Below are positions 11,915 to 62,904 of a DNA stretch of 64,000 bases, piece after piece. Location of the stretch: IMG/VR virus record IMGVR_UViG_3300036770_008729, positions 62,001-126,000 of that record, one strand, 5' to 3'. Position numbers and translations under genes: made by a program. How positions within the stretch are numbered: position 1 is the stretch's first letter; each line of letters begins with the position of its first letter. A model generated the notes under the pieces. That model had not been told where the DNA came from. It made no database searches and saw only the letters and a list, made by a program, of their open reading frames with translations.

Positions 11915-11932
11915 ATTTATCGTGAGTATAGG

Positions 11933-12781: not shown

Positions 12782-13114
12782 TTATCTTAAAAGCCAATCA
12801 CCACATTTAATTTGTTTGTAGTTTGATACATCGTCTTTCCACTCGTATATCCAACATTCGATGTCATTTGATGTAATTATCTTAGTTCTGATATATTCTG
12901 GTCCTTCAAAATCATCTAATTCTGGGAATATTTCTGGATTAACTAAATAAACATCACCCCATACTTTACCATTACCTTTTCTGATAAAACCGGGATAAAA
13001 ATCATTTACTTGATACATTGAACCAGTGATATAAGTTTTACCGCAAAACTTGGCATCTTTAAGAAGAGTTTTTCCGATATCTCTAAATACTCCGTAAACG
13101 AATAAATGTTCCAT
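12782..13114 (-). CDS. gamma-glutamylcyclotransferase (GGCT/AIG2-like)
   Basis: LFVYGVFR, YPGF, VWGDVY, LDDFEG, WIYEW. Confidence 0.85.
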   Translation of the reverse strand: MEHLFVYGVFRDIGKTLLKDAKFCGKTYITGSMYQVNDFYPGFIRKGNGKVWGDVYLVNPEIFPELDDFEGPEYIRTKIITSNDIECWIYEWKDDVSNYKQIKCGDWLLR

Positions 13115-13125
13115 ATAGTATATAT

Positions 13126-28422: not shown

Positions 28423-28439
28423 AAAATAGACCCAATTTT

Positions 28440-29702
28440 ATGTCTATTAATATTGTAGATAGGAGAAAAAATCCTAAGGGTAAATCCTCTGAAAACCGTC
28501 AGAGATTCCTTAAACGGATTGAAGGTCAAATAAAAAAGGCCCTGCCTGATATTGTAAAAAATACTAATGTAAAGGATATCACTGGTACCGGTGAGAAAAT
28601 TAAAGTTCCTGTAAAAGGAATTGGTGAGCCTCAGTTCTCTTATGATAGAGAATCTGGTAATAAAAAATATATTCACCCCGGGAATAAAGAATATGTTGAA
28701 GGTGATAAAATTAAAAAACCAGATGGTGGTGAAGGCAGAGGAAATGGAAGACAGGGCTCAAACGATCCAACCGTAACAGAAGATGAATTTACAGTTACAA
28801 TTAGTAGAGAAGAATTTTTAGATTATTTCTTTCAAGATTTGGAACTTCCAGATATGGTGAAAAAACATCTTAATTCTATTGTAGATTGGAAAAGAAAAAG
28901 AGCAGGTTACTCTTCTTATGGAAATCCAAGTAGATTAAATATCACAAGATCTTATAAAAACTCTATGGCTAGGAGAATGGCTGTTGGTATGTTCTTTGAT
29001 AAGAAAATAAAAGAAATTGAAGATAAACTTAAACTCAATCCACCAGATGATGAGAGATTAAAATTAGAAACAGAATTAGATAAACTTAAAAAAATGAAAC
29101 TATCTGTCTCATTTATGGAAGAGGTAGATCTTCAATATAACAACTTTGAGAAATATCCAGTTCCAGTAACATCAGCAGTAATGTTTTGTATTATGGATAT
29201 ATCTGGTTCAATGGGTGAAAAAGAAAAAGATATCTCTAAACGATTTTTTATGCTTCTTTATATGTTCCTAACTAAACAATATGAGAGGATTGAAATTGTT
29301 TTTATCAGACACCACACAGAAGCAAAAGAAGTTGATGAACAAGAATTCTTCAACTCAAAGGAAAGTGGTGGTACTGTGGTTCTTCCAGCTCTCGAATTAA
29401 TGAAAAAGATAATTGATGAGAGATATGCACAAAATTGGAATATCTATGCGGCACAAGCTTCTGATGGTGATGTTTGGAATAAATCAGATGCTGATAATTG
29501 TTATAAGATATTAGATGTTGATTTATTGAATAGAGTTCAATATATGGTTTATATTGAGGTTTGTAGGAGAAATGATGGAGATTTGTGGGGAAATTATAAT
29601 TTGTTGGCGCAAAAGAAAAAGAATTTTCAGATAGGGAAAATATCGGAAGTTAGTGAGATATGGAAAGTGTTTCAAGACTTCTTCAAAAAGAAAGTTGCAT
29701 AG
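28440..29702 (+). CDS. yeaH: YeaH/YhbH family vWA-domain protein
   Basis: IVDRRKNPKGKS..NRQRFL, PGNKEYVEGDKI, MFCIMDISGSMG (MIDAS), FIRHHTEAKEVDEQEFF, ESGGT, QASDGD. Confidence 0.93.
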   Translation: MSINIVDRRKNPKGKSSENRQRFLKRIEGQIKKALPDIVKNTNVKDITGTGEKIKVPVKGIGEPQFSYDRESGNKKYIHPGNKEYVEGDKIKKPDGGEGRGNGRQGSNDPTVTEDEFTVTISREEFLDYFFQDLELPDMVKKHLNSIVDWKRKRAGYSSYGNPSRLNITRSYKNSMARRMAVGMFFDKKIKEIEDKLKLNPPDDERLKLETELDKLKKMKLSVSFMEEVDLQYNNFEKYPVPVTSAVMFCIMDISGSMGEKEKDISKRFFMLLYMFLTKQYERIEIVFIRHHTEAKEVDEQEFFNSKESGGTVVLPALELMKKIIDERYAQNWNIYAAQASDGDVWNKSDADNCYKILDVDLLNRVQYMVYIEVCRRNDGDLWGNYNLLAQKKKNFQIGKISEVSEIWKVFQDFFKKKVA

Positions 29703-29703
29703 A

Positions 29704-31200
29704 ATGAAAAAATCAGAGATAAAAAAACTTCTTAGTAAATCCGATTGGAATGAACATACAATAAGAGTGTTTATTGAAATAATTGATAGAATATCAAAAG
29801 AACACCTTAATTTAGATGTTTATCCTAATCAATTTGAGATTGTTTCATCTGAGCAACTTCTTGATGCTTACGCCTCAATAGGACTCCCTATTTCATATAA
29901 CCATTGGAAGTATGGAAAAGATTTTGTTATAAATCAAAATCAATATAAAAAGGGTAGAATGGGTCTTTCTTATGAAATGGTAATTAATTCTAATCCATGT
30001 ATCTCCTATAACTTAGAAGATAATGATACTTGTTTAATGACTTTGGTTTATGCACATGTACAGGGACACAATCATTTCTTTAAGAACAATTACCTTTTCA
30101 AGCAATGGACTCAGGCAGATTCAATTATTGATTATATGTTATTTGCTAGAAACTTTATTTCCAAATGTGAAGAGAAATATGGATATGAAGAAGTTGAAAT
30201 GGTATTAGATTCTTGCCACGCTCTTATGAACTATGGTGTTGATAAATATAAAAAACCAAAAAAATTAACACCCAAAGAAGAAGCTGAAAGATTAAAGAAG
30301 AAATTAGAAGATGATAGAGTTTTAGTGGATGATATTTGGAGAACACTTCCAAAAGAAGAAGAAAAGAAAAAGAAGAAAATCAAATTCCCAGAACAACCTG
30401 AGGAAAACATTCTTTATTTTATCCAGAAAAACTCACCTATACTTAAAGAGTGGCAAAGAGAAATAATTAGAATTGTAAGAAAAACCGCACAATATTTTTA
30501 TCCACAAGGTCAAACCAAAGTTATTAACGAAGGAACGGCGACTTTTACTCATGTTGAAATCATCAATAAAATGTATGAAGAAGGTTATTTAGATGATGGA
30601 TTTATGCAAGAATTTCTACACCATCATTCTAATGTTGTATATCAACCAGGATTTGATTCTAAATACTATTCTGGACTTAATCCTTATACTTTGGGTTATA
30701 ATATCTTTAAGGATATAAAAAGAATGTCTATTGATCCAACGATTGAAGATTTGCATTGGTTTCCGGATATTGCTGGAAAGGGAAATTGGAAAGAAGTATT
30801 TCTTTATGCGGTTGAGAACTTTAAGGATGAAACTTTTATTTTACAATATTTGTCTCCAAGAGTGATGAGAGATATGAAATTGTTTGAGATAACGGATTAT
30901 GAGGAAGCGCCAAACTATGAAGTATCTTCAATTCATAATGAAAAGGGATATAAAAGAATAAGACAAACTTTATCTGAATTTTACAATCGTAATAGATATG
31001 TTCCAGATATACAGGTTTATAATGTTGATATAACTGGTAATAGAGGATTAACTTTGGAATATACACCTAATGATGCAAAAGAGTTGGATGTAAAAGAGGT
31101 TGATAAGGTGTTGCCTCATATTAAGTTTCTATGGGGATTTCCGGTAAAGATAATTAAGAAGTCTTATGGAAAAATTCATACAATTTCTACAACGGATTAG
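29704..31200 (+). CDS. spoVR: SpoVR/YcgB family protein
   Basis: GLPISYNHWKYGK, YEMVINSNPC, AHVQGHNHFFKNN, KVINEGTATFTH, NPYTLG, LWGFPV; start reassigned to ATG 29704. Confidence 0.93.
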   Translation: MKKSEIKKLLSKSDWNEHTIRVFIEIIDRISKEHLNLDVYPNQFEIVSSEQLLDAYASIGLPISYNHWKYGKDFVINQNQYKKGRMGLSYEMVINSNPCISYNLEDNDTCLMTLVYAHVQGHNHFFKNNYLFKQWTQADSIIDYMLFARNFISKCEEKYGYEEVEMVLDSCHALMNYGVDKYKKPKKLTPKEEAERLKKKLEDDRVLVDDIWRTLPKEEEKKKKKIKFPEQPEENILYFIQKNSPILKEWQREIIRIVRKTAQYFYPQGQTKVINEGTATFTHVEIINKMYEEGYLDDGFMQEFLHHHSNVVYQPGFDSKYYSGLNPYTLGYNIFKDIKRMSIDPTIEDLHWFPDIAGKGNWKEVFLYAVENFKDETFILQYLSPRVMRDMKLFEITDYEEAPNYEVSSIHNEKGYKRIRQTLSEFYNRNRYVPDIQVYNVDITGNRGLTLEYTPNDAKELDVKEVDKVLPHIKFLWGFPVKIIKKSYGKIHTISTTD

Positions 31201-33734: not shown

Positions 33735-33937
33735 TAGTTATTTGTACAGATGTGGACAATGTAGGTTCTGATATGAAATTATCACTTACAATAGGGAAAT
33801 CATATAAGGTCATTAGAGAAAATAATATAGGATTTTATTTAGAAGATGACCGTGGTTCTATTCAATGGTATTCTAAATGGAGGTTCAGTAGGTCAGAGTG
33901 GAGAGATAATCAAATAGATAAAATATTATTTACTTAG
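33731..33937 (+). CDS. small SH3-like protein with RDNQIDKIL tail
   Basis: VICT...LTIGKSY...DDRG...YSKWRF. Confidence 0.7.
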   Translation: MIVICTDVDNVGSDMKLSLTIGKSYKVIRENNIGFYLEDDRGSIQWYSKWRFSRSEWRDNQIDKILFT

Positions 33938-35094
33938 AATTTTTCTATCTCAATTCTTTTAATCTCTTCACCGAGTTCTTTTCCTTTAAATCCTTTATCC
34001 ATTAAGTCCTTAACCGATACGGTTGGTTTCCAATCAACAAATTTAATTATATTAATGTCTTTGATTTTACAGACATCAATCCATTCTAATATAGTAGAAT
34101 CTTTTATATGACAACCTAATTTGAGTTTATAAATATCAATTAATTGTTCTGGTTTGAATGATTGTAGTCTTAATAAAAATTCAACTTTGTTTGCTACTTC
34201 TCCTTCAATTTTGTATTCATCTATTAATTTTTTTGATAACCCTACAGGATTTTCTAATTTAAATAAATGTGATATCACTACAACAAAATCTTTACTATTT
34301 ATTGTAATTGTGTTGATAGAAGCTCCTGGAAAAACTTCATCCCACATATCAAATTTTGTAAAGAAATTTAAGTAATGATTAAAATCTTTCGCCTGAGACC
34401 AAGCCTTCTTAAACTCTTCCCATATTCTTTCCGCTGATATTCTTTTAATCTTACCAGTCTCTGGATCTATATTAGATAGTTGTTTTCTCTTTTCAATTGC
34501 CCTTTCCGTATCTTTATGTAGAGGATGTCCATATCTCGATGCGAATCTAAAGGCTCTTAAAATTCTAAGTGAATCTTCATCAAATCTTTCGACTGGATCA
34601 CCAACCATACGAGTTATTCCACTTTCTAAATCTTGCCTTCCACCTACCAAATCAACCACTTCTTTTTTATCTAAATCATAAAATAAAGAGTTGTAAGTGA
34701 GGTCACGACGCTTGACATCATCTTCAATGGTAACACCTAATTTAACTTCAGGATTTCTTCCCTTAGAAATGTCTTGTCTAAAAGTAGCGATTTCCATTCC
34801 ACCTGGTTGATCGTCAGTGTAGACAACTACTACACCGAAAGCTTTACCTTGTAAGTTAAAGTCATAGTTGTATGATTGTAGTATTTTAATAACCTCATCA
34901 GGAAGAGCATCGGTTGCTAAGTCAAAGTCTTTTGGTTTATCACCAGTTAGGAAATCACGAACTGATCCACCAACTAAATATAGTTTTTTACCAGCTTTTC
35001 TAAAAATGTTATTCAAATCTTTAACTGATTTTGGAATATAATCCCACATATCCGTTTTTGACTCCAAAAACTGTTCATACTTTTTTAATTTCAT
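33934..35094 (-). CDS. cca: class II CCA-adding tRNA nucleotidyltransferase with CTS-like N-terminal extension
   Basis: LVGGSVRD, DFDLAT, EIATFR, DDVKRRDLT, FDEDSLRILRAFRF, ISAERIWEE; starts MKLKKYEQFLES. Confidence 0.9.
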   Translation of the reverse strand: MKLKKYEQFLESKTDMWDYIPKSVKDLNNIFRKAGKKLYLVGGSVRDFLTGDKPKDFDLATDALPDEVIKILQSYNYDFNLQGKAFGVVVVYTDDQPGGMEIATFRQDISKGRNPEVKLGVTIEDDVKRRDLTYNSLFYDLDKKEVVDLVGGRQDLESGITRMVGDPVERFDEDSLRILRAFRFASRYGHPLHKDTERAIEKRKQLSNIDPETGKIKRISAERIWEEFKKAWSQAKDFNHYLNFFTKFDMWDEVFPGASINTITINSKDFVVVISHLFKLENPVGLSKKLIDEYKIEGEVANKVEFLLRLQSFKPEQLIDIYKLKLGCHIKDSTILEWIDVCKIKDINIIKFVDWKPTVSVKDLMDKGFKGKELGEEIKRIEIEKF

Positions 35095-52718: not shown

Positions 52719-53141
52719 ATGAAAAATCTATTCTTAGATGATATAAGAATTCCAAAAGATGCAATCGGCCTAGTTGATTCTAAATTAAATCAATTTTACT
52801 GGTCTCAAGATTGGTCTATTGTTAGAAGTTATGATGAATTCGTTCAATTTATTACCGAAAAAGGTTTGCCCGACTTTATATCATTTGACCACGACTTAGC
52901 AGACGACCACTATAACGACCTTTTTTCTGATAAAAATTGGGCAAAAAAAAATAGTGATATAAAATTAGACTACAATTCATATAAAGAAAAAACTGGATAC
53001 GAGTGTGCTAAATGGTTAGTAGATTGGTGTGTTGATAATGGATTGAAATTGCCAGATTATGTTGTTCATTCTGCTAATCCAGTTGGTAAGAGTAATATAA
53101 TTTCTTATTTAGAAAATGCTAAAAAGCATCTTTCATTATGA
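52719..53141 (+). CDS. cyclic-phosphate processing receiver-domain protein
   Basis: LFLDDIR.P, ISFDHDL, KTGYECAKWL, VHSANPVG; TATATTTG 4 nt upstream. Confidence 0.8.
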   Translation: MKNLFLDDIRIPKDAIGLVDSKLNQFYWSQDWSIVRSYDEFVQFITEKGLPDFISFDHDLADDHYNDLFSDKNWAKKNSDIKLDYNSYKEKTGYECAKWLVDWCVDNGLKLPDYVVHSANPVGKSNIISYLENAKKHLSL

Positions 53142-53156
53142 TAGACATAATTCATT

Positions 53157-53184
53157 AAAAACCTCCTTTTTAGGAGGCTTTTTT
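53157..53184 (+). terminator. intrinsic terminator
   Basis: cctcct-tttt-aggagg followed by T-run. Confidence 0.75.
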
Positions 53185-53209
53185 ATTTTATATCCTTATA
53201 TTTGTCATA

Positions 53210-53626
53210 ATGAATATAATTTTTACTGACATAGATGGTGTTCTTAATACGGTTAATAGAAATGATTGGAATAAAAATTCAATAGACCTATATAATAAAT
53301 TGTGCAAAGAATTTGACTTAAAGGCCGTTATATCTTCTACTTGGAGACTAAACCACACTAAGTCACAATTGCAAAATATATTCAATGAAAAAGGTGTAGA
53401 AGTGGAAATAATTGATTTTACAGATTCATTTCCGGATGAAGGTAGAGGAAGAGAAATTGAAGATTGGATTTTTAATAATTCTCATAGCAAATTCATCATA
53501 ATTGATGATAGTGTTAGAGATATAATTGCTTGGGGATTGCCAAATGTAGTTAGATGTAGAGGTTGGATTGGATTCTCACAAGAAGAATATGAATTGGCAA
53601 GAGAATTATTACTTAAAACTAACTAA
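53210..53626 (+). CDS. HAD-superfamily phosphatase (Swiss-Army-Knife RNA-repair-like)
   Basis: IFTDIDGVLN, ISSTWR, RGREI, IIIDD. Confidence 0.85.
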   Translation: MNIIFTDIDGVLNTVNRNDWNKNSIDLYNKLCKEFDLKAVISSTWRLNHTKSQLQNIFNEKGVEVEIIDFTDSFPDEGRGREIEDWIFNNSHSKFIIIDDSVRDIIAWGLPNVVRCRGWIGFSQEEYELARELLLKTN

Positions 53627-53826: not shown

Positions 53827-54393
53827 ATGAAACATCTAAAAAACTATAAGTTATTTGAAAATTTAAATACACCTATCAGTATAGAACAATTCTTATCTGA
53901 AATCAATTTCCCTCAAGAATTAAGAACACAAGTAATAAACTGGTGGAATTTAAACAGAGGTGAATTTATAATTCATTGTTTTAATTTCTCATCACCTCAA
54001 CCAATAGCTGGTGTTTTTCTTGGTGTAGATGAAATTGCTATCAATAAAAGATTACCAATGCCACCTCATATTAAATTATTTTTAGCTCTTCATGAATCTG
54101 GACATTGTAATCAACACAGAGAAGGAAGATTTATGACTGGTTATTATGACACCGTAATTGCTGGTAACAAACCAGCCTTTTTACAAGCCTATATGGATCT
54201 TGAAAAAGAAGCTAATGACTATGCTTTTAATTCATTAAGAGAGATGGGATTAGAAAGATTGTATCAATTTGAGGAATCTAGATTAAGAGGAAATCAAAGA
54301 GCAGGTGAAATGGTTTGGTCAATGATGACTGCTGATATAGCGAGATTCAATCCTAATGATTTTATTGACCTTTTGAAAAAACAAATACTTTAA
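53827..54393 (+). CDS. HExxH zinc metallopeptidase-like protein with CTS-like N-terminus
   Basis: MKHLKNYKLFEN; ALHESGHCNQH; EKEANDYA; AATATATA (53815-53822) 4 nt upstream. Confidence 0.75.
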   Translation: MKHLKNYKLFENLNTPISIEQFLSEINFPQELRTQVINWWNLNRGEFIIHCFNFSSPQPIAGVFLGVDEIAINKRLPMPPHIKLFLALHESGHCNQHREGRFMTGYYDTVIAGNKPAFLQAYMDLEKEANDYAFNSLREMGLERLYQFEESRLRGNQRAGEMVWSMMTADIARFNPNDFIDLLKKQIL

Positions 54394-55003: not shown

Positions 55004-55363
55004 ATGAACTGCAAATTAATTTTTACCATAATTTTTCTAATCACTTCGATTGTTGTTAAGTCGCAAACATTCAATATCACTGATAGAAATGGTTATACCG
55101 ATGAAGTTATTGTCAAATACCAATCAGCTTTGAATGGTGCTGATTTAGAAAATTTCAGAGGAAAAACAATCACAAAAACATTCGAGTTTACAAACGGAAT
55201 AAAGTTCACTCTAATTTCTGCAAAAGAACTTTTCATTTCCGGAAAATCAATCGACTTAAATCTTTACAAAGATGAAAGACCAGAAAGTTACAGAGAGCCT
55301 GTTTTCTTTCTGACCGATACTGGTTACTTATTGGCTCAATATAAAAAATTAGAAAAACAATGA
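55004..55363 (+). CDS. secreted protein with signal peptide, coupled to T9SS cargo gene
   Basis: MNCKLIFTIIFLITSIVVKSQ; ATGA overlap with next gene. Confidence 0.7.
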   Translation: MNCKLIFTIIFLITSIVVKSQTFNITDRNGYTDEVIVKYQSALNGADLENFRGKTITKTFEFTNGIKFTLISAKELFISGKSIDLNLYKDERPESYREPVFFLTDTGYLLAQYKKLEKQ

Positions 55364-58300
55364 AAAAATTAACTCTATTTTTAATTGCGACCTTATTTAG
55401 TTTCATTGCAATTTCACAACCAGCAAATAATAATTGTGGAACTGCTCAAAACTTAGGAACATTACCAACTCCAGCGGCTTGTCCCAATGGTGTAGGTGCG
55501 AATGTCAATGTTACTGGAACAACTGTAAATGCTACTTATCCACTACCTTATAATTACTTATTAGGTTGTCAAACTGGTGGAAATCAACCAGCACCATCTC
55601 CTGATGTTTGGTATCAATTTGTGGCATCTGGAAATCAAGTCAATATAAATATAACACCTGGTTCTAGTCCATTTTTAGCTAATCCATCTATCACTCTTTG
55701 GTCTGGTAGTTGTGGTTCATTGAATGGATTCAACTGTGATAATAATGGATCTAACAATGGTAATAACTCTGCTACATTTGAACCATTAACACCAGGTCAA
55801 ACTTATTACATACAAATATCAGGTTCTTCTGCAACATCAACTGGTAACTTTAATATGACAGTAAACGCTAGTAATGATTGCAATAATTGTCTTCAAAATG
55901 TAAGTTTGGTTGCTACACCTAATCCAGTCAATGGATTTTATCAACCTGGTCAAACTATAAACTTTTGTTTAACAATAACTGGATATAATCAAGTAAGTTC
56001 AAATTGGCTTCATGGGGTAATACCAACTTTTGGTAATGGTTGGAATCTAGCTACACTTACAACAACACCGGCCAATTCTTGTTCAACTGCTGGAAATTGG
56101 CAATGGGCAAACTCTAACACATCAACTGCAACAAATCTCATCACAGGTCCCGGATTCTACTATTTCTCAGGATCTGGAGGTTCTGGTAATAACTTTGGAG
56201 ATAATGGATCGACTTGTACAAGAACTTTTTGTTGGTCTATTCAAACAAAATCAGGTTGCACATCAGGAAATAACTTAAATATATCAGTAAATACAACCGC
56301 TGATGGTGAAACTGGTTCTTGGACAAGTCCTGCTTGTCAGGGTGATCCAAATATAAACTTTGCTGCTCAATTGAATTGTTGTCAAACTACGGCTACATCA
56401 ACTTCTCTAACTTGTTTCGGTGGAACAAATGCTACGGCTACTGCAAATCCAACAGGTGTATCACCATTTAACTACTCTTGGAATACAACACCAGTTCAAA
56501 CAACTCAAACCGCTACTGGTCTTTCTGCTGGAAGTTATACAGTAACAGTAACTGATAACGGTGGTTGTGTTTCATCAGCCTCTGTTACAATCACTCAACC
56601 AACACAACTTCAAGTTACAACCACTTCAACAAATGCTAGTTGTGGTCAATTAAATGGATCTGCAACTGCTACTGCTTCAGGTGGAACTGGACCTTACTCC
56701 TACTCTTGGAATACAACTCCTGTTCAAACAACTGGAACCGCAACTGGACTTGGACCTGGAACTTATACAGTAACCGCAACATCTGCTGGTAACTGTCAAT
56801 CAACGGGTACGGTTACTATTTCATCAACTGGTTCAATAACTGCAACCTCGACATCAACTAATGTTACTTGTAATGGTGCAAATAATGGAACAGCTACTGC
56901 TAATCCAAATGGTTCTACTAATTATACTTATTTGTGGAATACAATACCTCCACAAAATACTCAAACCGCCACAGGTTTAGCTCCTGGTAGTTATACTTGC
57001 ACAGTGACAAGTTTTGGATGTCAGACAACTACAACAGTAACTATCACACAACCTCCAGTTTTAACTGCAGCAATAACAACATCAAATGTAATTTGTAATG
57101 GTGGAAATACTGGTTCGGCAGTTGTTACACCAAATGGTGGAACACCAGGATATACTTATCTTTGGACAACCTCACCAAATCAAATAACTGCTACTGCTAC
57201 AAATCTTACATCAGGAACTTACTCTGTAAATGTAACTGATTTGAATGGTTGTACTGTTATAGCATCAGCGAACATTACCCAACCTCAACAATTAAATATA
57301 ACTTTGGTATCATCACAGAATCCAGGATGTAGTGGTTCTTCAACTGGTCAAATTGTGGTTTCTGCATCAGGTGGTGTTGGACCTACTTACTTTTACACTT
57401 TGAATGGTGGAACTCCACAAACATCAGGAACTTTTACTGGATTATCAGGTGGAACTTATACTATTTCTGTAAGTGATGCAAATAACTGCACACAACAAAT
57501 ACAGGTTTCTTTGACTCAACCTTTTCCTATTTCTTCTTCTTATACAGTAACAAATGTTAATTGTAATAGTGGAAATAACGGACAAATACAATTAACGACT
57601 ATTGGAGGAACACCTCCATATACTTATCTTTGGTCTAATTCTTCTCAATCTCCAAATCTCACATCACTTACAGCGGGAACTTATTCAGTTGTTATTACGG
57701 ATGCTTCGGGTTGTCAATTTAATTTGACTAATATAGTAGTTACTCAACCAAATGCTATTAATATACTTTTAACTCCGAATCCATCTTCGATTTGTATTGG
57801 ACAATCTTCAAGTATCACTGCACTTATTGTTGGTGGGACTTTACCATACAACTTTGTATGGTCTAATGGTCAATTAACACAAAATATAACTGTTACACCT
57901 ACTACAACAACTGGTTATACTTTACAAGTATCAGATGCAAATGGTTGTGGACTTAGTGCTAATACGATTATTAATGTTAATCCACCACTCACTGTTTTAA
58001 CAACTTCCTCACAAGGAACTATTTGTGTTGGTCAATCATCGACATTAACTGCTAGTGTGACCGGAGGTAATGGTGGACCATATACTTATAACTGGAATCC
58101 AACAGCTCAATCTGGTCAGTCAATAATAGTAACACCGGGAACTACCACACTTTACACAGTGACAGTAGGTGATGGTTGTTCTACACCAGTAACTAGCACA
58201 GTAACAGTAAATGTTAATTTACTTCCGGTTGTTCAATATACAACAACTGCACTTTCAGGATGTGAGCCTTTAACTGTTACTTTTACCAATAATACACCAA

Positions 58301-58977
58301 ATGTAAATTGTGTTTGGTTTATAAATGGTAATCAAGTAACAAACTGCACCACATCTCAATCTTTTAATACATCTGGAAGTTATTCAGTAACTCTTTCAGT
58401 GACCAATACAAATGGTTGTTCTAACACATCACCAAATATATTGGTGAATGTTTATCCAAAGGCGGTTTCTAACTTTTCAGCTAACCCAATTGTAACAGAT
58501 TTATTAAACCCAAATGTTAGTTTTACCAACTTCTCTACCTCAGGAAATTATCAGTGGTCTTTTGGAGATGGAAACATTTCTTCACTTATAAACCCACAGA
58601 ATACCTATTCTGATACTGGAAGTTATAATGTTCAGTTAATTGTTGTTTCACCTGATGGGTGTAGGGACACTTCTTCACTTGAGATATACATAAGTGATTT
58701 ATTTACATTTTATATTCCTAATGCTTTTACACCGAATGGTGATGGTAAAAATGATGTATTCACACCTCAGATAAGTGGTGCAGAGTGGTATCAATTCTGG
58801 ATTTACAACAGATGGGGAGAGCAAATTTGGGACTCTGGAACTAATGGTGAACCTTGGAATGGAATCTATAAAGGTAGTTTAGTTCAACAAGATGTTTATG
58901 TTTGGAAGTTGATTGTAAAGGAAAAACAACGAGGCAAAAAGCATTTATTTACAGGACATGTTAGTGTTATTAAATAA
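55360..58977 (+). CDS. SprB-repeat/PKD adhesin-like protein with T9SS type B (gliding motility-associated) C-terminal domain
   Basis: Signal peptide; repeated YSWNT...ATGL..G.YTVTVTD..GC units; PKD (WSFGDG); CTD YIPNAFTPNGDGKNDVF...IYNRWGE...WNG...DVYVWK. Confidence 0.9.
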   Translation: MKKLTLFLIATLFSFIAISQPANNNCGTAQNLGTLPTPAACPNGVGANVNVTGTTVNATYPLPYNYLLGCQTGGNQPAPSPDVWYQFVASGNQVNINITPGSSPFLANPSITLWSGSCGSLNGFNCDNNGSNNGNNSATFEPLTPGQTYYIQISGSSATSTGNFNMTVNASNDCNNCLQNVSLVATPNPVNGFYQPGQTINFCLTITGYNQVSSNWLHGVIPTFGNGWNLATLTTTPANSCSTAGNWQWANSNTSTATNLITGPGFYYFSGSGGSGNNFGDNGSTCTRTFCWSIQTKSGCTSGNNLNISVNTTADGETGSWTSPACQGDPNINFAAQLNCCQTTATSTSLTCFGGTNATATANPTGVSPFNYSWNTTPVQTTQTATGLSAGSYTVTVTDNGGCVSSASVTITQPTQLQVTTTSTNASCGQLNGSATATASGGTGPYSYSWNTTPVQTTGTATGLGPGTYTVTATSAGNCQSTGTVTISSTGSITATSTSTNVTCNGANNGTATANPNGSTNYTYLWNTIPPQNTQTATGLAPGSYTCTVTSFGCQTTTTVTITQPPVLTAAITTSNVICNGGNTGSAVVTPNGGTPGYTYLWTTSPNQITATATNLTSGTYSVNVTDLNGCTVIASANITQPQQLNITLVSSQNPGCSGSSTGQIVVSASGGVGPTYFYTLNGGTPQTSGTFTGLSGGTYTISVSDANNCTQQIQVSLTQPFPISSSYTVTNVNCNSGNNGQIQLTTIGGTPPYTYLWSNSSQSPNLTSLTAGTYSVVITDASGCQFNLTNIVVTQPNAINILLTPNPSSICIGQSSSITALIVGGTLPYNFVWSNGQLTQNITVTPTTTTGYTLQVSDANGCGLSANTIINVNPPLTVLTTSSQGTICVGQSSTLTASVTGGNGGPYTYNWNPTAQSGQSIIVTPGTTTLYTVTVGDGCSTPVTSTVTVNVNLLPVVQYTTTALSGCEPLTVTFTNNTPNVNCVWFINGNQVTNCTTSQSFNTSGSYSVTLSVTNTNGCSNTSPNILVNVYPKAVSNFSANPIVTDLLNPNVSFTNFSTSGNYQWSFGDGNISSLINPQNTYSDTGSYNVQLIVVSPDGCRDTSSLEIYISDLFTFYIPNAFTPNGDGKNDVFTPQISGAEWYQFWIYNRWGEQIWDSGTNGEPWNGIYKGSLVQQDVYVWKLIVKEKQRGKKHLFTGHVSVIK

Positions 58978-58980: not shown

Positions 58981-59009
58981 AAAAAACCTGTTGAAAGACA
59001 GGTTTTTTT
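58981..59009 (+). terminator. intrinsic terminator
   Basis: aaaaaacctgt-tgaaag-acaggtttttt. Confidence 0.8.
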
Positions 59010-59037
59010 ATTGCAATTTTTTTACTATATTTGTATT

Positions 59038-59430
59038 ATGAGAAAAGAAAGCATTATAGAAATGATTGATAAAAGAATTATTGAAAACTTTGTCAATGGT
59101 TATAGTCCAGAGTTTATTATAGCTGACATACAATCAAAAACAGATAAAATGTCTGACTTTATTACAAATCAAGGAATTGATTTAGAAAAATTTATTGATA
59201 TGGATTTTGATGTTTTAACTGATGATGATTTCTCAAAAGATAAATTACCAATGACTAGAACTAAATATACAGTTTACTATGTTAAACAATCTAGAAAAAG
59301 AATAAAAGATATAAACTGGATTATTGAGAATTGTAAAAGATTTCCACATTTATCAAAATCACAAGTATTTAGGTTGATTAAACTTAGAGAAAAGTTGAGT
59401 CGTGAGAACGCTATTGAATTACCCTTTTAA
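59038..59430 (+). CDS. hypothetical protein
   Basis: Start reassigned to ATG 59038, 4 nt after TATATTTG (59026-59033). Confidence 0.65.
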   Translation: MRKESIIEMIDKRIIENFVNGYSPEFIIADIQSKTDKMSDFITNQGIDLEKFIDMDFDVLTDDDFSKDKLPMTRTKYTVYYVKQSRKRIKDINWIIENCKRFPHLSKSQVFRLIKLREKLSRENAIELPF

Positions 59431-60162
59431 GTTTCTTATCCATTCAGAGAACTTTATTAAGCTTTCATTAAGTGTCTCAACAAAATTAAAATCTTTTAAG
59501 AAGTCACCAAAGTCTTCAACATAACCTTTTTTACTTTCATCTGTTTTGGTTTGAGTCCATTGCCAGTTAAAACTTAATTGAGTTGGTGTTTTAAACCCGA
59601 AGAATTTTAACACTTCTTTTTCTAATTCAACTGCTTCACTTCCATTCCAGTTATGACCAGTTGCTACAATTCCAACTTCTTTATCCTTTAATAAGTTAGA
59701 TTCTCCTAATGTAGTGTGTCTATTCTCAAGCCAAGTTAATCTTTCAATTAATTGTGTGTAGATAGCATTCATTTTACCCCATCTTATAGATCCAAAAAAG
59801 ATAACTATATCTGCCTCAAAGATTGCATTTGCAACTTTATACATTTCATCTGATTTATTATTGAGTGAAGCCCAACATCTAATTATTTTATGTGGATTCT
59901 TTTCTTTATCCTTTAGAAGTGCGTCTTTTAGACCACAAGTATTTCCTCTTTTAGTTGATACATTACCTTCACATGGAAAGATTTTAAGTTTAGACACATT
60001 AATAATCTCTATACCTTCAATCTTTTTAGCAATTTCATCTGCTATTATAGAAGATTTAGGAAGTTCTTTATCACCAGACCATCTATTAGAAGTAGTAAGA
60101 AAAACAATCTTTTTCTTTTGATTTTTCTTAAGATAGTTGTAAAGTCTTTTCAATTTATCCAT
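59419..60162 (-). CDS. flavodoxin-like / NAD(P)H-dependent FMN reductase family protein
   Basis: LTTSNR, IFPCEG, CWAS, ADIVIFFGSIRWG, VATGHNW; start reassigned to 60162. Confidence 0.75.
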   Translation of the reverse strand: MDKLKRLYNYLKKNQKKKIVFLTTSNRWSGDKELPKSSIIADEIAKKIEGIEIINVSKLKIFPCEGNVSTKRGNTCGLKDALLKDKEKNPHKIIRCWASLNNKSDEMYKVANAIFEADIVIFFGSIRWGKMNAIYTQLIERLTWLENRHTTLGESNLLKDKEVGIVATGHNWNGSEAVELEKEVLKFFGFKTPTQLSFNWQWTQTKTDESKKGYVEDFGDFLKDFNFVETLNESLIKFSEWIRNLKG

Positions 60163-60207
60163 ATTGTATATATAAAAAAAAGAATATACAATCTTAATAT
60201 ATACAAT

Positions 60208-60540
60208 ATGAAAAAGTTTACACAATTAAACGAAGCTAAGTTTTTTACACCAGATCCAAGTATTATTAAAAAATATGCTGCTAGAATTATTCCCCTTTAT
60301 ATAACTGGTGAATTAAAGACTAGAGATACTAAATTAGTAGATGAGTGGTTAGAGATGAATAGGTCATCTGAATCTCACAAAAATGAAAATGTTATTTGTG
60401 ATTTAGAAATTATAGCAATAAAAAACATTTTTGATAATCCACTAACTAATAATGGATATTCTCAATTAGTTCAAGATATAGATGCTGGTTGTCCACGATT
60501 AGAAAGATTTTTAAGACCTATTATTTTCAAAAAGTTCTAA
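60208..60540 (+). CDS. hypothetical protein with CTS-like N-terminus
   Basis: MKKFTQLNEAK; AATATATA (60196-60203) 4 nt upstream. Confidence 0.7.
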   Translation: MKKFTQLNEAKFFTPDPSIIKKYAARIIPLYITGELKTRDTKLVDEWLEMNRSSESHKNENVICDLEIIAIKNIFDNPLTNNGYSQLVQDIDAGCPRLERFLRPIIFKKF

Positions 60541-60601
60541 AACTTTTGAAATTATCAAACATATATATTTTATCATATCTGCATAAATTATATATAGGTT
60601 C

Positions 60602-62020
60602 ATGAAGAATATTTTTTTAACTTTAATATTTTCTCTGATATCAAATCTTTGCTTATCACAAGCTTATTCTACCTGTGCATTAGCCTCTGCGGGTATAGCT
60701 ATATCAAGTGGTGGGTGTATTAATAATCAAACCTTCACAGGGAGTGTAAATATGGCCGGTCTTTGTGTAGGCGGTAATAATCCAGCAATTCACATTAAGT
60801 TTGTAGCTGGTTCTTGTTCACAATTTACAATTACACCAACTGCCAATATCGCTAACATAGGAACTCAAATTCTAACTACTGCGTGTAGTGGTGTTGTTGG
60901 TACAACTGCTTGTCACGAAAATGTTATTGCTGGTGTTCCATTTATGGCAGATGCACATGATAATAGTGGTAATTATTTATTGACACCAGGTACAACTTAT
61001 GTTTTGAGAATATGGGGTGCTGTAGGTACCTCAACATTTAATATTTGTTATAATTCTGGAGTAACAGAGAATCCATCAAACGAATGTTCTGGTGCGTTTG
61101 GTTTAGGAACACTTCCTACGCAGTTTTATAATGGTGGTGATTGCTCATTTACTGGATCTGGAACTGATGCTACAACTTCGGATCCAGCTGCTTCTGGTTT
61201 GTGTGCTGGTTCATTGGAAAATACTCAATGGATTAAATTTCAACCATTGGCTGGTGTTTCTACATTTCAAATTATTGGTAGTTCTATCAATTGTACTGGT
61301 GGTGGATGTGGATTTCAATTTGGTATATTTTCAGGAAGTTGTGGATCTTTAATCTCTGAGGGTTGTTATGGGAATAAAGTTTGCTCTGGTGGACAGTCTG
61401 TATCAGGTCCTACTAACGTTAGTGCTACTGATGGATTTTCAATAGCTTGGTCTGGTACTTCTACAACTGGATTTACAGCAACTATTACAAAAACCGGTGG
61501 TGGTAATTTTATCGGTACAGAGGTTTTTTACTTAGTTATGGATGGCAATGCTGATGCTGATTGTCAATATACTTTACAAGGAACAAATTTACAGGCTTTA
61601 CCAATTGAATTAATCTCTTTTGAAGGTCATTTCAATGGTGAGTTAAACGTTTTACAGTGGTCATGTGCAACTGAAATAAATAATGATTATTTTAGTTTAG
61701 AAAGGTCGGATGATGGAGTAAGTTGGGGAAGTATTGTAAATATATCAGGTGTAGGTAATTCCAACTTAATAACAAATTACTCTTATTATGATAATACTTT
61801 TTTACCTGAAAGGTTTAATTACTATAGATTAAAACAAGTTGACTTCGATGGTAGTTTCAAGTACTTTGATATTATTGCAATAAACAATATGAATATAAAT
61901 AAGCCTAAACTACTAAGAGTTTATAATATCTTAGGGAATAAAGTAGACAAAGAATCAACTGGACTATTGATATATGAATACTCAGATGGTAGTTTCAAAA
62001 AGACATTCGTTAAAGATTAA
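60602..62020 (+). CDS. Cys/Gly-rich secreted protein with Bacteroidota T9SS-type C-terminal region
   Basis: Signal peptide; LPIELISF...WSCATEINNDYFSLERS...YYRLKQVDFDG; short CTD VYNILG...YEYSDGSFKK. Confidence 0.8.
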   Translation: MKNIFLTLIFSLISNLCLSQAYSTCALASAGIAISSGGCINNQTFTGSVNMAGLCVGGNNPAIHIKFVAGSCSQFTITPTANIANIGTQILTTACSGVVGTTACHENVIAGVPFMADAHDNSGNYLLTPGTTYVLRIWGAVGTSTFNICYNSGVTENPSNECSGAFGLGTLPTQFYNGGDCSFTGSGTDATTSDPAASGLCAGSLENTQWIKFQPLAGVSTFQIIGSSINCTGGGCGFQFGIFSGSCGSLISEGCYGNKVCSGGQSVSGPTNVSATDGFSIAWSGTSTTGFTATITKTGGGNFIGTEVFYLVMDGNADADCQYTLQGTNLQALPIELISFEGHFNGELNVLQWSCATEINNDYFSLERSDDGVSWGSIVNISGVGNSNLITNYSYYDNTFLPERFNYYRLKQVDFDGSFKYFDIIAINNMNINKPKLLRVYNILGNKVDKESTGLLIYEYSDGSFKKTFVKD

Positions 62021-62904
62021 TCCTCTATACAAGAAGGTGGCTTTATATTTCTTTTGAATTTCCAATGCATATTCTCCCAATCTTGTATTTCTTTATTAAG
62101 ATTTTTAATTTCCTCAGCAAATAAATTTAATTCCTCTTTTTGAGTATTAAAATCTCTTACTTTATCATTAATTTCATCTTCCTGTTGAGTAAGTTTATCT
62201 TCTTTTCTTTTAAGTTCTTTTGATAAATTTTCTAATTCTTTTTCTTTATCTGAAACTAATTTTAAGTCAGTATCAATTTTAGATTGTAGTTCTGCATACT
62301 TAGAATCTAAATCTTTTGATGATTCTAAAAGACTTCTATCAAAGTTTCTTTCTTTTTCTTTTAAGTCTTGTAATTTATCTTCTAAGTCTAGTTGTTTTTC
62401 AGTAAGATCTCTTGATCGAGTTCTTAATTCATCCTCTTTTTTATCTAATGATTTTAACTCTTCTTTATGCTCAGACTCTCTTTTTTCAACTCTTTTAAGT
62501 CTGATGTCAATCTCCTCTTCTTTGTCTTTGATTCTTCTTTCTCTATTGTTTAAGTCTGTTTCTTTCCATTCTATCTCTTTAACCTTAGATTCGTCCATAG
62601 TTGGACCACTATTTTGTGGAATGGATGAAAGAATCATATCCTCAATGAATGGTATTAATTTCTTACCTAATTGAGCAGGTTGTGGCATTTTTTCAGACCT
62701 CATAAAAGATAACAACTCAGCTTTCCAGTCAATGATTTCAAAAATCTGAGGATTCATCTCAATAACTTCTTTATCAAGTGGAATAGTGTCTCCTTTTAAT
62801 TTATATTTGAATTCTTCAATTATTGTTCCAGATTTTATTAAAAATATCTTTTTATCAGGACTTACATATTGATAATCTGATAAAAGCTTGTGTTTAATCT
62901 TCAT
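62017..62904 (-). CDS. long coiled-coil protein
   Basis: About 170 aa of E/K/L heptads; TATAAATA upstream. Confidence 0.75.
   Translation of the reverse strand: MKIKHKLLSDYQYVSPDKKIFLIKSGTIIEEFKYKLKGDTIPLDKEVIEMNPQIFEIIDWKAELLSFMRSEKMPQPAQLGKKLIPFIEDMILSSIPQNSGPTMDESKVKEIEWKETDLNNRERRIKDKEEEIDIRLKRVEKRESEHKEELKSLDKKEDELRTRSRDLTEKQLDLEDKLQDLKEKERNFDRSLLESSKDLDSKYAELQSKIDTDLKLVSDKEKELENLSKELKRKEDKLTQQEDEINDKVRDFNTQKEELNLFAEEIKNLNKEIQDWENMHWKFKRNIKPPSCIED

What the first reader, a model, noticed from the sequence alone, without database searches (positions are those of the whole stretch)
55004..58977. Phage-encoded SprB-like adhesin with a T9SS type B CTD but no cognate PorP/SprF gene
Seen: signal peptide, multiple SprB-type repeats, PKD domains and a type B CTD, coupled to a small secreted ORF. 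Established: type B CTD cargos such as SprB need a PorP/SprF-like partner and ride the gliding machinery. Inference: the phage protein borrows a host PorP/SprF and could alter gliding, adhesion or biofilm behaviour of infected cells, or compete with SprB, a known phage-sensitivity determinant in Flavobacterium.
Basis: partly seen in the sequence, partly recalled or inferred. Interest (0 to 1): 0.75.

Follow-up and report, generated by a model that had tools for sequence, protein, structure and literature searches.

The report
Huge-phage T9SS adhesin with small partner
A very large freshwater phage of Bacteroidota carries a two-gene cassette, taken from its hosts and kept under selection, that should place a long adhesin-like protein on the infected cell's surface through the host's type IX secretion system; the missing PorP/SprF gene is normal for this adhesin family, and the more interesting part is a small uncharacterised partner protein predicted to bind the adhesin's head.

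Summary
Window 55360-58977 encodes a 1205-aa protein with a Sec signal peptide, a two-β-sandwich head, 6 SprB repeats plus 2 Ig-like repeats, 2 PKD domains and a full type B T9SS CTD. It is translationally coupled to a 119-aa secreted ORF and ends at a terminator.

It is phage-borne, not host contamination. The cassette is syntenic in the 642-kb huge phage LR756502 and in other phage contigs. Phage genes flank it, and dN/dS is 0.17 (CTD 0.10).

No PorP/SprF gene exists in this record or in two complete ~640-kb relatives, with a working positive control. That is not unusual. The same two-gene module sits in bacterial chromosomes, also without an adjacent PorP/SprF. One such genome has about 31 type B CTDs but only about 13 PorP genes.

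The phage CTD groups with "orphan" CTDs, so it probably uses a shared host shuttle.

The small ORF belongs to an uncharacterised family of about 400 representatives. It always lies just upstream of genes with this head domain (19/19 loci) and is predicted to bind the head, not the CTD.

The protein is not an SprB orthologue, and a Flavobacterium host is not supported; the closest chromosomal copy is in a Crocinitomicaceae MAG. The benefit to the phage is untested.

The parts
55004..55363 (+). Small secreted partner ORF (119 aa; signal peptide about residues 1-20, mature protein from Gln21). Member of an uncharacterised family with no Pfam model.
   Evidence: ORF and translation. No Pfam or NCBIfam hit. 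15 close homologues. 401 representatives in a profile search. Lies directly upstream of a head-domain adhesin gene in 19/19 loci. AF2 model pLDDT 82 with an alpha/beta fold and no PDB match. Predicted to bind the adhesin head (0.65 against a best control of 0.00).
55360..58977 (+). 1205-aa T9SS type B cargo, adhesin-like. The start overlaps the small ORF's stop (ATGA).
   Evidence: dN/dS is 0.17 against an 84%-identical relative.
55360..55419 (+). Sec signal peptide (residues 1-20, MKKLTLFLIATLFSFIAIS|Q).
   Evidence: Read from the sequence. Gln at +1 fits the Bacteroidetes Q-rule (PMC5837995). No predictor was run.
55420..56394 (+). Head region (residues 21-345): two beta-sandwich domains. 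The first is PPC / GBD_T9SS_assoc-like.
   Evidence: AF2 pLDDT 82.8. PF23759 matches 13 of 28 homologues (best E 2.5e-7), but the focal copy has only sub-threshold PPC hits. Foldseek matches are generic (ColG collagen-binding domain, GH2 sugar-binding domains, Sgo0707 adhesin head). dN/dS 0.12.
56395..58179 (+). Stalk (residues 346-940): eight ~75-residue Ig-like repeats. Six are recognised as SprB repeats and two are divergent.
   Evidence: Pfam SprB x6. Periodicity read from the translation. Repeat number varies among relatives (13 in LR756502).
58180..58689 (+). Two PKD domains (residues about 941-1110).
   Evidence: PKD_4 / PKD x2.
58714..58974 (+). Type B T9SS C-terminal sorting domain (residues 1119-1205).
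   Evidence: CHU_C at E 3e-13 and TIGR04131 at 44.7-51.2 bits (cut-off 35). dN/dS 0.10. Groups with orphan-type CTDs.
58981..59008 (+). Intrinsic terminator-like hairpin with a T-run immediately after the adhesin stop codon. It marks the end of the two-gene operon. The scan reported the hairpin on the minus strand, and the inverted repeat reads the same way on the plus strand.
   Evidence: Sequence. Scan (11-bp stem).

Best explanation
This is a two-gene operon carried by a huge phage of freshwater or subsurface Bacteroidota, related to the 634-642-kb 'huge phages' LR756502 and LR745206.

Gene 1 encodes a ~100-residue Sec-exported protein of an uncharacterised family. Gene 2 encodes a 1205-aa surface adhesin-like protein. 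Its parts, in order, are a signal peptide, a two-β-sandwich head, an Ig-like stalk (SprB repeats and PKD domains) and a type B T9SS sorting domain.

The module was captured from a Bacteroidota chromosome; the closest chromosomal copy is in a Crocinitomicaceae MAG. It has since been inherited and diversified within the phage lineage under purifying selection.

During infection the two proteins would enter the periplasm through Sec. The small protein would bind the adhesin's head, acting as a chaperone, a mask or a co-exported subunit. The CTD would take the adhesin through the host SprA translocon. A host-encoded PorP/SprF-type shuttle, of the kind shared by the many 'orphan' type B cargos, would collect it and hold it on the cell surface, possibly on the gliding track.

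The infected cell would therefore display a phage-specified adhesin. This fragment also encodes two further phage T9SS cargos with type A CTDs.

Shown here: the gene architecture, the phage context, the bacterial origin of the module, the absence of a phage PorP, the selection, and the conserved pairing of the small ORF with the head domain.

Inferred: binding of the partner to the head (model only), secretion, which shuttle is used, and any benefit to the phage (attachment of infected cells, or superinfection exclusion by altering receptor adhesins).
For: Architecture.

Phage context:
- T4-type topoisomerase II subunits, phrog_1479, phrog_1818 and RNA ligase lie upstream.
- A virion structural / tail-spike protein and a baseplate wedge lie elsewhere in the genome.
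- The order topo II ... small ORF, adhesin, downstream ORF is the same in LR756502. It is also the same in a 617-kb contig and in a 21-kb contig.

Lineage:
- Verified phage copies form one clade of 38 tips (support 0.87).
- The bacterial copy P0050 is sister to that clade plus three neighbouring sequences whose context was not checked (P0036, P0040, P0044); that node has support 0.97.
- The other verified bacterial copies lie outside.

Selection: dN/dS is 0.17 overall, 0.12 for the head and 0.10 for the CTD.

The module is bacterial too. A homologous small ORF sits next to a head-domain adhesin, with no adjacent PorP, in contigs of 2.04 Mb, 786 kb and 268 kb. The same holds in 7 further genomes.

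PorP: none in the phage or in two complete relatives, against about 13 in G001.

Orphans are common. G001 has about 31 type B CTDs, of which only 9 are PorP-adjacent. In F. johnsoniae the orphans share the shuttle Fjoh_1677 (PMC12618676). The phage CTD groups with the module CTDs and with a block of 11 orphan CTDs in G001.

Partner binding: median score 0.65 against a best control of 0.00. That mark was reached by 58 of 80 solved complexes and 2 of 110 mismatched pairs. Contacts fall only on the head. The small ORF also accompanies a head-domain protein that has a type A CTD.

Recurrence: the gene is seen in metagenomes from several independent studies. Fragments at 98.5% identity occur in two lake metatranscriptome libraries.
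Against: - There is no experimental evidence of secretion, surface display or phenotype.
- The host is unknown.
- The record is truncated, so a PorP gene in the unseen part of this phage cannot be excluded. Two complete relatives have none.
- The complex prediction succeeded in only 2 of 3 runs and used my own alignments, so the calibration holds only roughly.
- The predicted head interface is not more conserved than the rest of the head (0.59 against 0.66).
- The CTD tree rests on 100 residues and is weakly resolved.
- The RNA-library fragments are at low depth and could be DNA carry-over.
- Not all members of the 'phage clade' were verified as phage-borne.
- Major capsid and terminase genes were not identified in this record. 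They were not specifically searched for.
Confidence: 0.65

Rival explanations
1. First reader's specific version. The protein acts as an SprB mimic or competitor: it loads onto the gliding track through a borrowed SprF and changes gliding, biofilm behaviour or sensitivity to other phages.
For: The protein has a type B CTD and SprB repeats. [quoted passage not shown] The phage CTD groups with orphan-type CTDs. SprB and RemA are thought to be phage receptors (PMC9804748).
Against: It is not an SprB orthologue. It is 1205 aa, has a different head domain and has no sprC/sprD/sprF context. Its closest relatives are a distinct adhesin family with their own small partner. Other type B cargos are statically anchored, and CTD sequence alone cannot say which fate applies here. 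No host or phenotype is known.
Confidence: 0.25
2. Host contamination or a chimeric assembly. On this view the adhesin cassette belongs to a bacterial chromosome, which the 'provirus' label would fit.
For: IMG/VR classes the record as a provirus. The adhesin region has higher GC than its surroundings (0.377 against about 0.30). Homologous modules exist in bacterial chromosomes.
Against: The same cassette sits in the same position relative to the topoisomerase II genes in an independently assembled 642-kb huge phage and in other contigs. Phage genes lie on both sides within the record. Phage copies are monophyletic and at most 56% identical (head region) to named bacterial copies. Beyond the record's end, another assembly continues with phage-like ORFs and no housekeeping genes. 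The GC rise is explained by the Thr/Gly/Ser/Pro/Asn-rich repeats.
Confidence: 0.03
3. The small upstream ORF is a phage-supplied substitute for PorP/SprF, acting as a miniature shuttle for the type B CTD.
For: It is secreted, translationally coupled to the adhesin, and always adjacent to it.
Against: The mature protein has about 98 residues and a soluble alpha/beta fold. PorP/SprF proteins are outer-membrane proteins of about 310-350 aa. It shows no similarity to PorP. The same family accompanies a head-domain protein with a type A CTD. It also occurs in bacteria that have about 13 PorP genes. The complex model places it on the head, with no confident contact to the PKD+CTD tail.
Confidence: 0.04
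4. The protein is a virion component, an Ig-like fibre or decoration protein used for adsorption. On this view the secretion signals are vestigial.
For: Ig-like, PKD and SprB-type domains are common on phage particles. Another giant in this genome matches Hoc-like decoration families.
Against: The signal peptide with the Q-rule site and the CTD are both intact. The CTD is the most constrained part of the protein (dN/dS 0.10). The architecture is identical to that of chromosomal cell-surface homologues. The gene lies among replication and RNA-repair genes rather than structural genes. Virions assemble in the cytoplasm, whereas this protein is addressed to the periplasm and the outer surface.
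Confidence: 0.06
5. The cassette is a neutral passenger: a recently acquired host gene with no role for the phage.
For: No function has been demonstrated. Huge phages carry many host-like genes.
Against: The cassette is retained at a syntenic site across a diversified clade, with head identity ranging from 57% to 99%. Selection is purifying on all parts. The reading frame is intact in every phage copy examined except one: the copy in L023 (783 aa) had no CHU_C domain on record.
Confidence: 0.08

Closest known systems
'Orphan' type B CTD T9SS substrates of Flavobacterium johnsoniae (Fjoh_1123, Fjoh_1720, Fjoh_4934), served by the shuttle Fjoh_1677 that is encoded elsewhere in the genome (Paillat et al. 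2025, PMC12618676)
   Same: Both have a Sec signal peptide and a TIGR04131 / CHU_C type B CTD at the extreme C-terminus. Neither has an adjacent PorP/SprF gene, so a PorP/SprF-type shuttle encoded elsewhere is implied. Both are adhesin-like with Ig-like repeats.
   Different: This one is encoded by a phage, so the shuttle must come from another genome. It has a distinct two-β-sandwich head and an obligatory small upstream partner gene that is not described for the F. johnsoniae proteins. Its secretion and final location are untested.
SprB gliding adhesin of F. johnsoniae (sprC-sprD-sprB-sprF operon)
   Same: Both have SprB-type repeats and a type B CTD. Both are cell-surface proteins dependent on the T9SS. 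Both have possible relevance to phage adsorption (PMC9804748).
   Different: SprB is several-fold larger (thousands of residues, from established knowledge). It is encoded with sprC, sprD and its cognate sprF. The phage protein has 1205 aa, a different N-terminal head and no sprC/D/F neighbours. Its closest relatives form a separate family. It is not an orthologue.
Phage-encoded T9SS cargo reported earlier: 'Cryophage' (Bellas et al. 2020, PMC7468147) and T9SS sorting-domain proteins in crAss-BACON phage clusters (de Jonge et al. 2019, PMC6949934)
   Same: In all cases a Bacteroidota phage carries genes whose products bear a T9SS sorting domain and presumably use the host's secretion system.
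   Different: The Cryophage cargos have type A CTDs, which use the general shuttle PorV, and are enzymes or PA14 proteins. The CTD type is not stated for the crAss-BACON clusters. Here the cargo has a type B CTD, a class known for shuttle specificity. It is an adhesin-like protein with a dedicated small partner and is conserved across a huge-phage lineage. The same phage fragment also has two type A cargos.
Chromosomal two-gene modules (small ORF plus head-domain adhesin) in Crocinitomicaceae and other uncultured Bacteroidota, for example in GCA_023957475 and GCA_017303895
   Same: The gene order, the small-ORF family, the head domain and the type B CTD are the same, and there is no adjacent PorP.
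   Different: They are at most 56% identical in the head. They lie in housekeeping contexts and have different stalk lengths (Ig_7 repeats rather than mainly SprB repeats). None has been characterised experimentally, as far as the searched library shows.

Membership tests
T9SS type B CTD cargo (TIGR04131 / PF13585 CHU_C) | C-terminal sorting domain matching the family model above its curated cut-off, located at the extreme C-terminus | tested here: met
   TIGR04131 scores 44.7 bits (hmmscan) and 51.2 bits (genome search) against a cut-off of 35, at residues 1119-1203 of 1205. CHU_C scores 50.1 bits against a cut-off of 27.
T9SS type B CTD cargo (TIGR04131 / PF13585 CHU_C) | [quoted passage not shown] | tested here: met
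   Judged by inspection only. Lys-Lys n-region, 15-residue hydrophobic core, A-I-S|Q cleavage motif with Gln at +1, which is the Bacteroidetes Q-rule (PMC5837995). No predictor was available.
T9SS type B CTD cargo (TIGR04131 / PF13585 CHU_C) | Secretion depends on the T9SS translocon and a PorP/SprF-type shuttle | not testable with these tools
   This requires expression in a T9SS host and its mutants.
T9SS type B CTD cargo (TIGR04131 / PF13585 CHU_C) | Cognate PorP/SprF gene immediately downstream (typical but not universal: 9 of 12 in F. johnsoniae) | tested here: not met
   No PF11751 or TIGR03519 match in G000, LR756502 or LR745206, against about 13 in the control genome G001. tblastn and phmmer were negative. 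The gene is followed by a terminator. This feature is not defining, because orphans exist in bacteria.
SprB (gliding motility adhesin orthologue) | SprB-type repeats | tested here: met
   PF13573 x6, E 9e-42.
SprB (gliding motility adhesin orthologue) | Orthology and operon context: very large protein encoded with sprC, sprD and sprF | tested here: not met
   The protein has 1205 aa. Its neighbours are a 119-aa secreted ORF and a terminator. There is no PorP/SprF. The nearest relatives share a head domain typical of a different adhesin family. The size and operon of SprB are taken from established knowledge, not tested here.
SprB (gliding motility adhesin orthologue) | Moves along the cell surface on the gliding track | not testable with these tools
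   This requires live-cell imaging.
Phage-encoded auxiliary (moron-type) gene | Lies inside a phage genome, flanked by phage genes, and is conserved at the same place in related phages | tested here: met
   Phage families lie upstream. Structural genes lie at G000 0.8-3.9 kb and 181-183 kb. Synteny holds with LR756502, the 617-kb contig, L025 and L063.
PorP/SprF shuttle family (as a candidate identity for the small ORF or its neighbours) | Match to PF11751 / TIGR03519; outer-membrane protein of about 300-350 aa | tested here: not met
   No match. The small ORF is 119 aa with a soluble alpha/beta model. The neighbouring ORFs have no hit.
GBD_T9SS_assoc (PF23759) / PPC-like beta-sandwich, for the head domain | Match to the Pfam model above threshold | tested here: inconclusive
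   The focal head gives only sub-threshold hits (PPC E 0.024). 13 of 28 homologous heads match PF23759 at E <= 1, best 2.5e-7. The AF2 model shows two beta-sandwiches with a ColG collagen-binding-domain match, probability 1.0 and TM 0.59 by target.

The most novel reading that the evidence does not exclude
The ~100-residue partner is a new class of T9SS accessory protein. It would be a periplasmic escort, or a 'hitch-hiking' subunit with no CTD of its own, that binds the folded head of a specific adhesin family and travels with it through the translocon. Huge phages would have captured the adhesin-partner pair, together with type A cargos, to resurface infected cells during their long infection cycle. 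That could tether infected cells to particles or neighbouring cells, or displace native receptor adhesins on the shared orphan shuttle and so exclude competing phages.
Probability: 0.2. Interest if true: 0.75.

Novelty: new variant of a known kind. Interest (0 to 1): 0.5.

Why it matters
Phage-encoded T9SS cargo has been noted before, but only for type A or unspecified sorting domains. Type B signals are read by specific PorP/SprF shuttles, so a phage-borne type B cargo has to match a host shuttle. That makes it a natural probe of shuttle specificity and a possible marker of host range.

The work also defines a conserved and apparently undescribed pair: a small secreted protein and an adhesin head domain. 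The small-protein family has about 400 representatives. It has no Pfam model and no match among solved structures. The pair occurs in uncultured freshwater Bacteroidota and in their huge phages.

If the phage proteins do reach the surface, huge phages remodel the adhesive surface of infected cells. That bears on particle attachment, gliding and superinfection in aquatic Bacteroidota.

Tried and rejected
- A megablast of the locus against GenBank phages found nothing. Only protein-level searches found relatives.
- PF11751 and TIGR03519 genome searches, tblastn and phmmer for PorP/SprF in the phage were all negative.
- PHROGs and Pfam scans of the downstream ORFs (59011-62904) and of the 188-aa upstream ORF gave nothing useful.
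- I tested whether the 188-aa ORF matches the rhomboid / DUF6576 genes found upstream of the module in related phages. It does not.
- Fold searches of the small-protein model found no solved structure and only 'uncharacterised' AlphaFold clusters.
- Fold searches of the head gave only generic beta-sandwich matches and no specific ligand.
- The interface-conservation test was neutral: small ORF p = 0.055, head not enriched.
- dS for the small ORF was saturated, so no dN/dS could be computed for it.
- The metatranscriptome search produced only two short near-identical fragments at low depth, which is not proof of transcription.
- I considered the conserved downstream 130-aa ORF (59038-59430) as part of the cassette and rejected it. 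It lies after a terminator, has no signal peptide and evolves faster (dN/dS 0.48).
- I did not identify capsid or terminase genes. The large ORFs I scanned did not include recognisable ones.

Full report
**1. What is at the coordinates**

Two ORFs lie on the plus strand: 55004-55363 (119 aa) and 55360-58977 (1205 aa). The second start codon overlaps the first stop codon as ATGA.

Pfam finds six SprB repeats (E 9e-42), two PKD domains and a CHU_C domain at residues 1119-1193 in the large protein. NCBIfam TIGR04131, the type B T9SS sorting domain, scores 44.7 bits against a cut-off of 35 and covers nearly the whole model at the extreme C-terminus. A six-frame genome search gives 51.2 bits.

Reading the translation shows eight ~75-residue Ig-like repeats between residues 346 and 940, of which Pfam calls six. 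Two PKD domains and the CTD follow.

Both proteins begin with a typical Sec signal peptide that ends in Ser followed by Gln at +1. This fits the Bacteroidetes 'Q-rule' for signal peptidase I substrates (PMC5837995). It was judged by eye, because no predictor was available.

A strong hairpin plus T-run follows the adhesin stop directly (58981-59008). The transcription unit is therefore the small ORF plus the adhesin.

**2. Phage or host?**

The window is part of a 281,114-bp IMG/VR virus record that is labelled 'provirus' with 94% CheckV completeness.

Genes upstream of the cassette are phage families:
- both T4-type topoisomerase II subunits (phrog_543 and phrog_551, E 7e-179 and 8e-151);
- phrog_1479 and phrog_1818 (cREC_REC and HAD_SAK_2 RNA-repair domains);
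- an RNA ligase and a tRNA nucleotidyltransferase;
- a PrkA/YeaG-YeaH-SpoVR-like operon with full-length matches to rare PHROGs.

Elsewhere in the record there is a virion structural / tail-spike protein at 0.8-3.9 kb and a baseplate wedge subunit at 181.6-183.3 kb.

By tblastn the nearest GenBank phages are the metagenomic huge phages LR745206 (635 kb), LR756502 (642 kb) and LR756504 (636 kb). Their PrkA is 86%, 86% and 66% identical.

In LR756502 the gene order is the same as in the window: topo II large subunit, topo II medium subunit, small ORFs, a 122-aa homologue of the small ORF (40% identity), a 1670-aa homologue of the adhesin, and a homologue of the downstream ORF. The adhesin homologue is 53% identical over residues 1-938 and has 13 SprB repeats, PKD and CHU_C.

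The same arrangement occurs in a 617-kb JGI contig, in a 21-kb contig next to topo II, and in a 15-kb contig with an 84%-identical head.

The last 10.9 kb of the record are 100% identical to another assembly. That assembly continues for 9.8 kb with small, Pfam-less ORFs and no housekeeping genes. The record is therefore a truncated piece of a larger phage genome, and its edge is not a phage-host junction.

Host contamination is very unlikely.

**3. PorP/SprF**

PF11751 and TIGR03519 find nothing in the record or in the complete genomes LR756502 and LR745206. The same TIGR03519 search finds about 13 genes in a 3.1-Mb bacterial genome, G001 = GCA_023957475, named a Crocinitomicaceae MAG by NCBI. 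This is the positive control that the built-in control genomes lacked.

tblastn and phmmer with a genuine PorP from that genome are also negative.

LR756502 and LR745206 carry 3 and 4 matches to the type B CTD model respectively; six of the seven are over the family cut-off. Phage-borne type B cargos without a phage PorP are therefore a lineage trait.

**4. Why that is not unusual**

A search with the head region (residues 1-345) finds at least 188 proteins.

The best hits, at 57-99% identity, include proteins on contigs of 506, 617 and 642 kb. Named bacterial MAG proteins begin at 56%.

In undoubted chromosomal contexts the homologous adhesin is also preceded by a 122-130-aa ORF and is not followed by PorP/SprF. 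These contexts are a 2.04-Mb contig, a 786-kb contig, and a 268-kb contig carrying lpxC, lpxD and fabA. The upstream ORFs are homologous to the phage small ORF, sharing ten invariant positions.

Seven further genomes of G001's family that have a small-ORF match all carry a gene immediately downstream that starts with the full head domain (E 1e-103 to 1e-123). Where that gene is complete, it ends in a type B CTD.

No PorP lies in any of 17 module loci, apart from an unrelated canonical CTD-PorP pair a few kb away in one of them.

In G001, about 31 ORFs carry a type B CTD above the cut-off but only 9 are PorP-adjacent. Four PorP genes are themselves orphans.

In F. johnsoniae, 3 of 12 type B substrates are orphans. 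All three use the orphan shuttle Fjoh_1677 and are routed to the gliding machinery (PMC12618676).

A tree of the last 100 residues places the phage CTD first with the other phage copies, then with the CTDs of the bacterial module proteins, and then with a block of 11 orphan CTDs of G001. Five of the PorP-paired CTDs of G001 cluster elsewhere. This tree is short and only suggestive.

The likeliest route is therefore a host shuttle that is shared among orphan cargos.

**5. Origin and selection**

In a head-domain tree of 121 sequences, all six copies verified as phage-borne fall in one clade of 38 tips (support 0.87). G001's chromosomal copy is sister to that clade plus three neighbouring sequences (P0036, P0040, P0044) whose context was not checked, at a node with support 0.97. 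The other verified bacterial copies lie outside.

This fits a single capture from a Crocinitomicaceae-like bacterium followed by diversification in the phage lineage. It also gives a weak hint about the host. The hint rests on one gene, and not all clade members were verified.

Against the 84% relative, dN/dS is 0.17 overall. By region it is 0.12 for the head, 0.19 for the repeats, 0.18 for the PKD domains and 0.10 for the CTD. dS is high, so these values are approximate. The secretion signal is the most constrained part, which argues against a vestigial signal or a virion role.

The gene is present at about 100% of sampled words in three subsurface metagenome runs of one study. It is present at 12-65% in freshwater, lagoon and other metagenome runs from ten further studies.

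Two RNA-library contigs match it at about 98.5% identity: 272 nt in one lake metatranscriptome and 161 nt in another freshwater metatranscriptome. Depth is low and DNA carry-over cannot be excluded.

**6. The small partner**

The family has no Pfam or NCBIfam model.

A profile search of 1.84 billion representatives finds 401 members at E <= 1e-3. The 150 best-scoring members listed are 97-184 aa long.

Among species-representative genomes the family is patchy. It was found in none of 300 other Bacteroidota sampled evenly across the phylum, and in 8 of 151 genomes of G001's family.

The AF2 model (pLDDT 82) is a small alpha/beta fold. It has no match among solved structures and only 'uncharacterised' AlphaFold neighbours.

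The small ORF tracks the head domain and not the CTD type: a head-domain protein with a type A CTD also has a family member directly upstream (hhalign probability 98.6%). One type A homologue lacks it.

I ran a three-chain complex prediction with the head (21-345), the PKD+CTD tail (1030-1205) and the mature small protein as the partner. The median score was 0.65 against a best control of 0.00. That mark was reached by 58 of 80 solved complexes and 2 of 110 mismatched pairs. The calibration holds only roughly here, because my own alignments were used.

Two of the three runs agree on 96% of contacts. All confident contacts are on the head, mainly its first beta-sandwich (residues 61-69, 78-79, 115-125). 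They involve the conserved C-terminal strand of the small protein (residues 108-119).

Conservation at the predicted interface does not add support.

The small protein is thus best read as a head-binding partner: a chaperone, a mask or a co-exported subunit. It is not a PorP substitute.

**7. The head**

The AF2 model (pLDDT 82.8) shows two beta-sandwiches.

13 of 28 homologous heads match PF23759 (GBD_T9SS_assoc). The focal head gives only sub-threshold PPC-like hits.

Foldseek returns generic matches, including the ColG collagen-binding domain, the sugar-binding domains of GH2 enzymes and a Gram-positive adhesin head. This fits a binding module, but the ligand is unknown.

**8. Comparison and novelty**

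Phage-encoded T9SS cargo has been reported before. Type A cargos were described in 'Cryophage' (PMC7468147). Sorting-domain proteins were noted in crAss-BACON phage clusters (PMC6949934). Q-rule secreted proteins were noted in P. gingivalis phages (PMC10367356).

I found no paper that links huge phages with the T9SS. None of the phage papers I read on T9SS sorting domains describes a phage-borne type B cargo, and the small-partner family carries no name or Pfam model in the databases searched.

The protein is a member of the type B cargo class. It is not an SprB orthologue.

I rate it a new variant of a known kind: a phage-borne, orphan-type type B adhesin module with an uncharacterised head-binding partner.

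The fragment also encodes two further T9SS cargos with type A CTDs and Q-rule signal peptides. One has 1499 aa with PKD_6, P-domain and Ig domains. The other has 2325 aa with a Gly-rich domain, six SprB repeats and five PKD_6 domains. Surface remodelling of the infected cell therefore looks like a broader strategy of this phage.

**9. Verdict**

- The 'missing PorP/SprF' is ordinary for this adhesin family.
- The biological role for the phage (attachment, gliding interference or superinfection exclusion) remains inference.

Interest is moderate (0.5).

Noticed in passing
window 4270-8769 (-) and G000 7250-14227 (+) = L001:7250-14227: There are two more phage-encoded T9SS cargos, both with type A CTDs (Por_Secre_tail) and Q-rule signal peptides. 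One is a 1499-aa protein with PKD_6 x3, a proprotein-convertase P-domain, and Ig and CARDB domains. The other is a 2325-aa protein with a Gly_rich_2 domain, 6 SprB repeats and 5 PKD_6 domains. The 2325-aa protein also matches Hoc-like decoration PHROGs.
   Followed up: partly
G000 record end (281114); L064:1-9809: The IMG/VR record is labelled 'provirus' and 94% complete. Its last 10.9 kb match another assembly at 100% identity, and that assembly runs 9.8 kb further with phage-like ORFs (Laminin_G_3 x2, a 905-aa fn3 protein, a PrsW protease). The nearest relatives are 634-642 kb. The record is probably a truncated piece of a much larger phage, and the completeness estimate and provirus call look unreliable.
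   Followed up: partly
window 26500-31200 (+): A PrkA/YeaG serine kinase, YeaH-like and SpoVR-like three-gene operon sits on the phage. PrkA is 86% identical to those of LR745206 and LR756502. It is also present in Ralstonia phage RsoM2USA and in Enterobacter phage LAU1 (annotated YeaG). This is a bacterial stress and sporulation-associated signalling module carried by jumbo phages.
   Followed up: no
window 18772-20040, 33934-35094, 52719-53626: An RNA-repair toolkit is scattered through the window. It includes a T4 RnlA-type RNA ligase (phrog_562), a tRNA nucleotidyltransferase, a cREC_REC cyclic-phosphate-processing receiver domain and a HAD_SAK_2 'Swiss Army Knife' RNA-repair domain. This suggests a counter-defence against tRNA- or RNA-targeting host systems.
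   Followed up: no
window 59038-59430 (+): A basic ~130-aa ORF with no signal peptide lies just after the adhesin terminator. It is conserved at the same place in LR756502 (39% identity) and in L063, but evolves fast (dN/dS 0.48). Its function is unknown, and it may simply be phage backbone.
   Followed up: partly
window 53827-54393 (+): A 188-aa ORF upstream of the module contains an HExxH motif (LALHESGHCNQH), has no signal peptide and has no Pfam or PHROG hit. It is unrelated to the rhomboid / DUF6576 membrane proteins that occupy a similar position in related phages (L025 5777-6373, L029 4834-5424, L063 2413-3048).
   Followed up: partly
L029:535-3586: In the 617-kb relative the topoisomerase II medium-subunit gene appears split. 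DNA_topoisoIV pieces of 167 aa and 415 aa are separated by a 427-aa ORF with no Pfam hit. This could be a mobile insertion or a homing-endonuclease-type element.
   Followed up: no
L021:7127-10744 (LR745206): A second huge phage carries a different 1205-aa type B cargo. It has a Reelin subrepeat-B-like N-terminal domain in place of the head studied here. Its 159-aa upstream ORF was not matched by the small-ORF family profile. Its PKD+CTD tail is 40% identical to the focal one. This suggests heads are swapped on a common tail.
   Followed up: partly
L026:3345-5387 and L027:1-5423: In two bacterial chromosomes the small-ORF / adhesin module lies directly downstream of another type B CTD adhesin gene (680 aa and more than 3700 aa). 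The modules therefore sit in tandem adhesin arrays.
   Followed up: no
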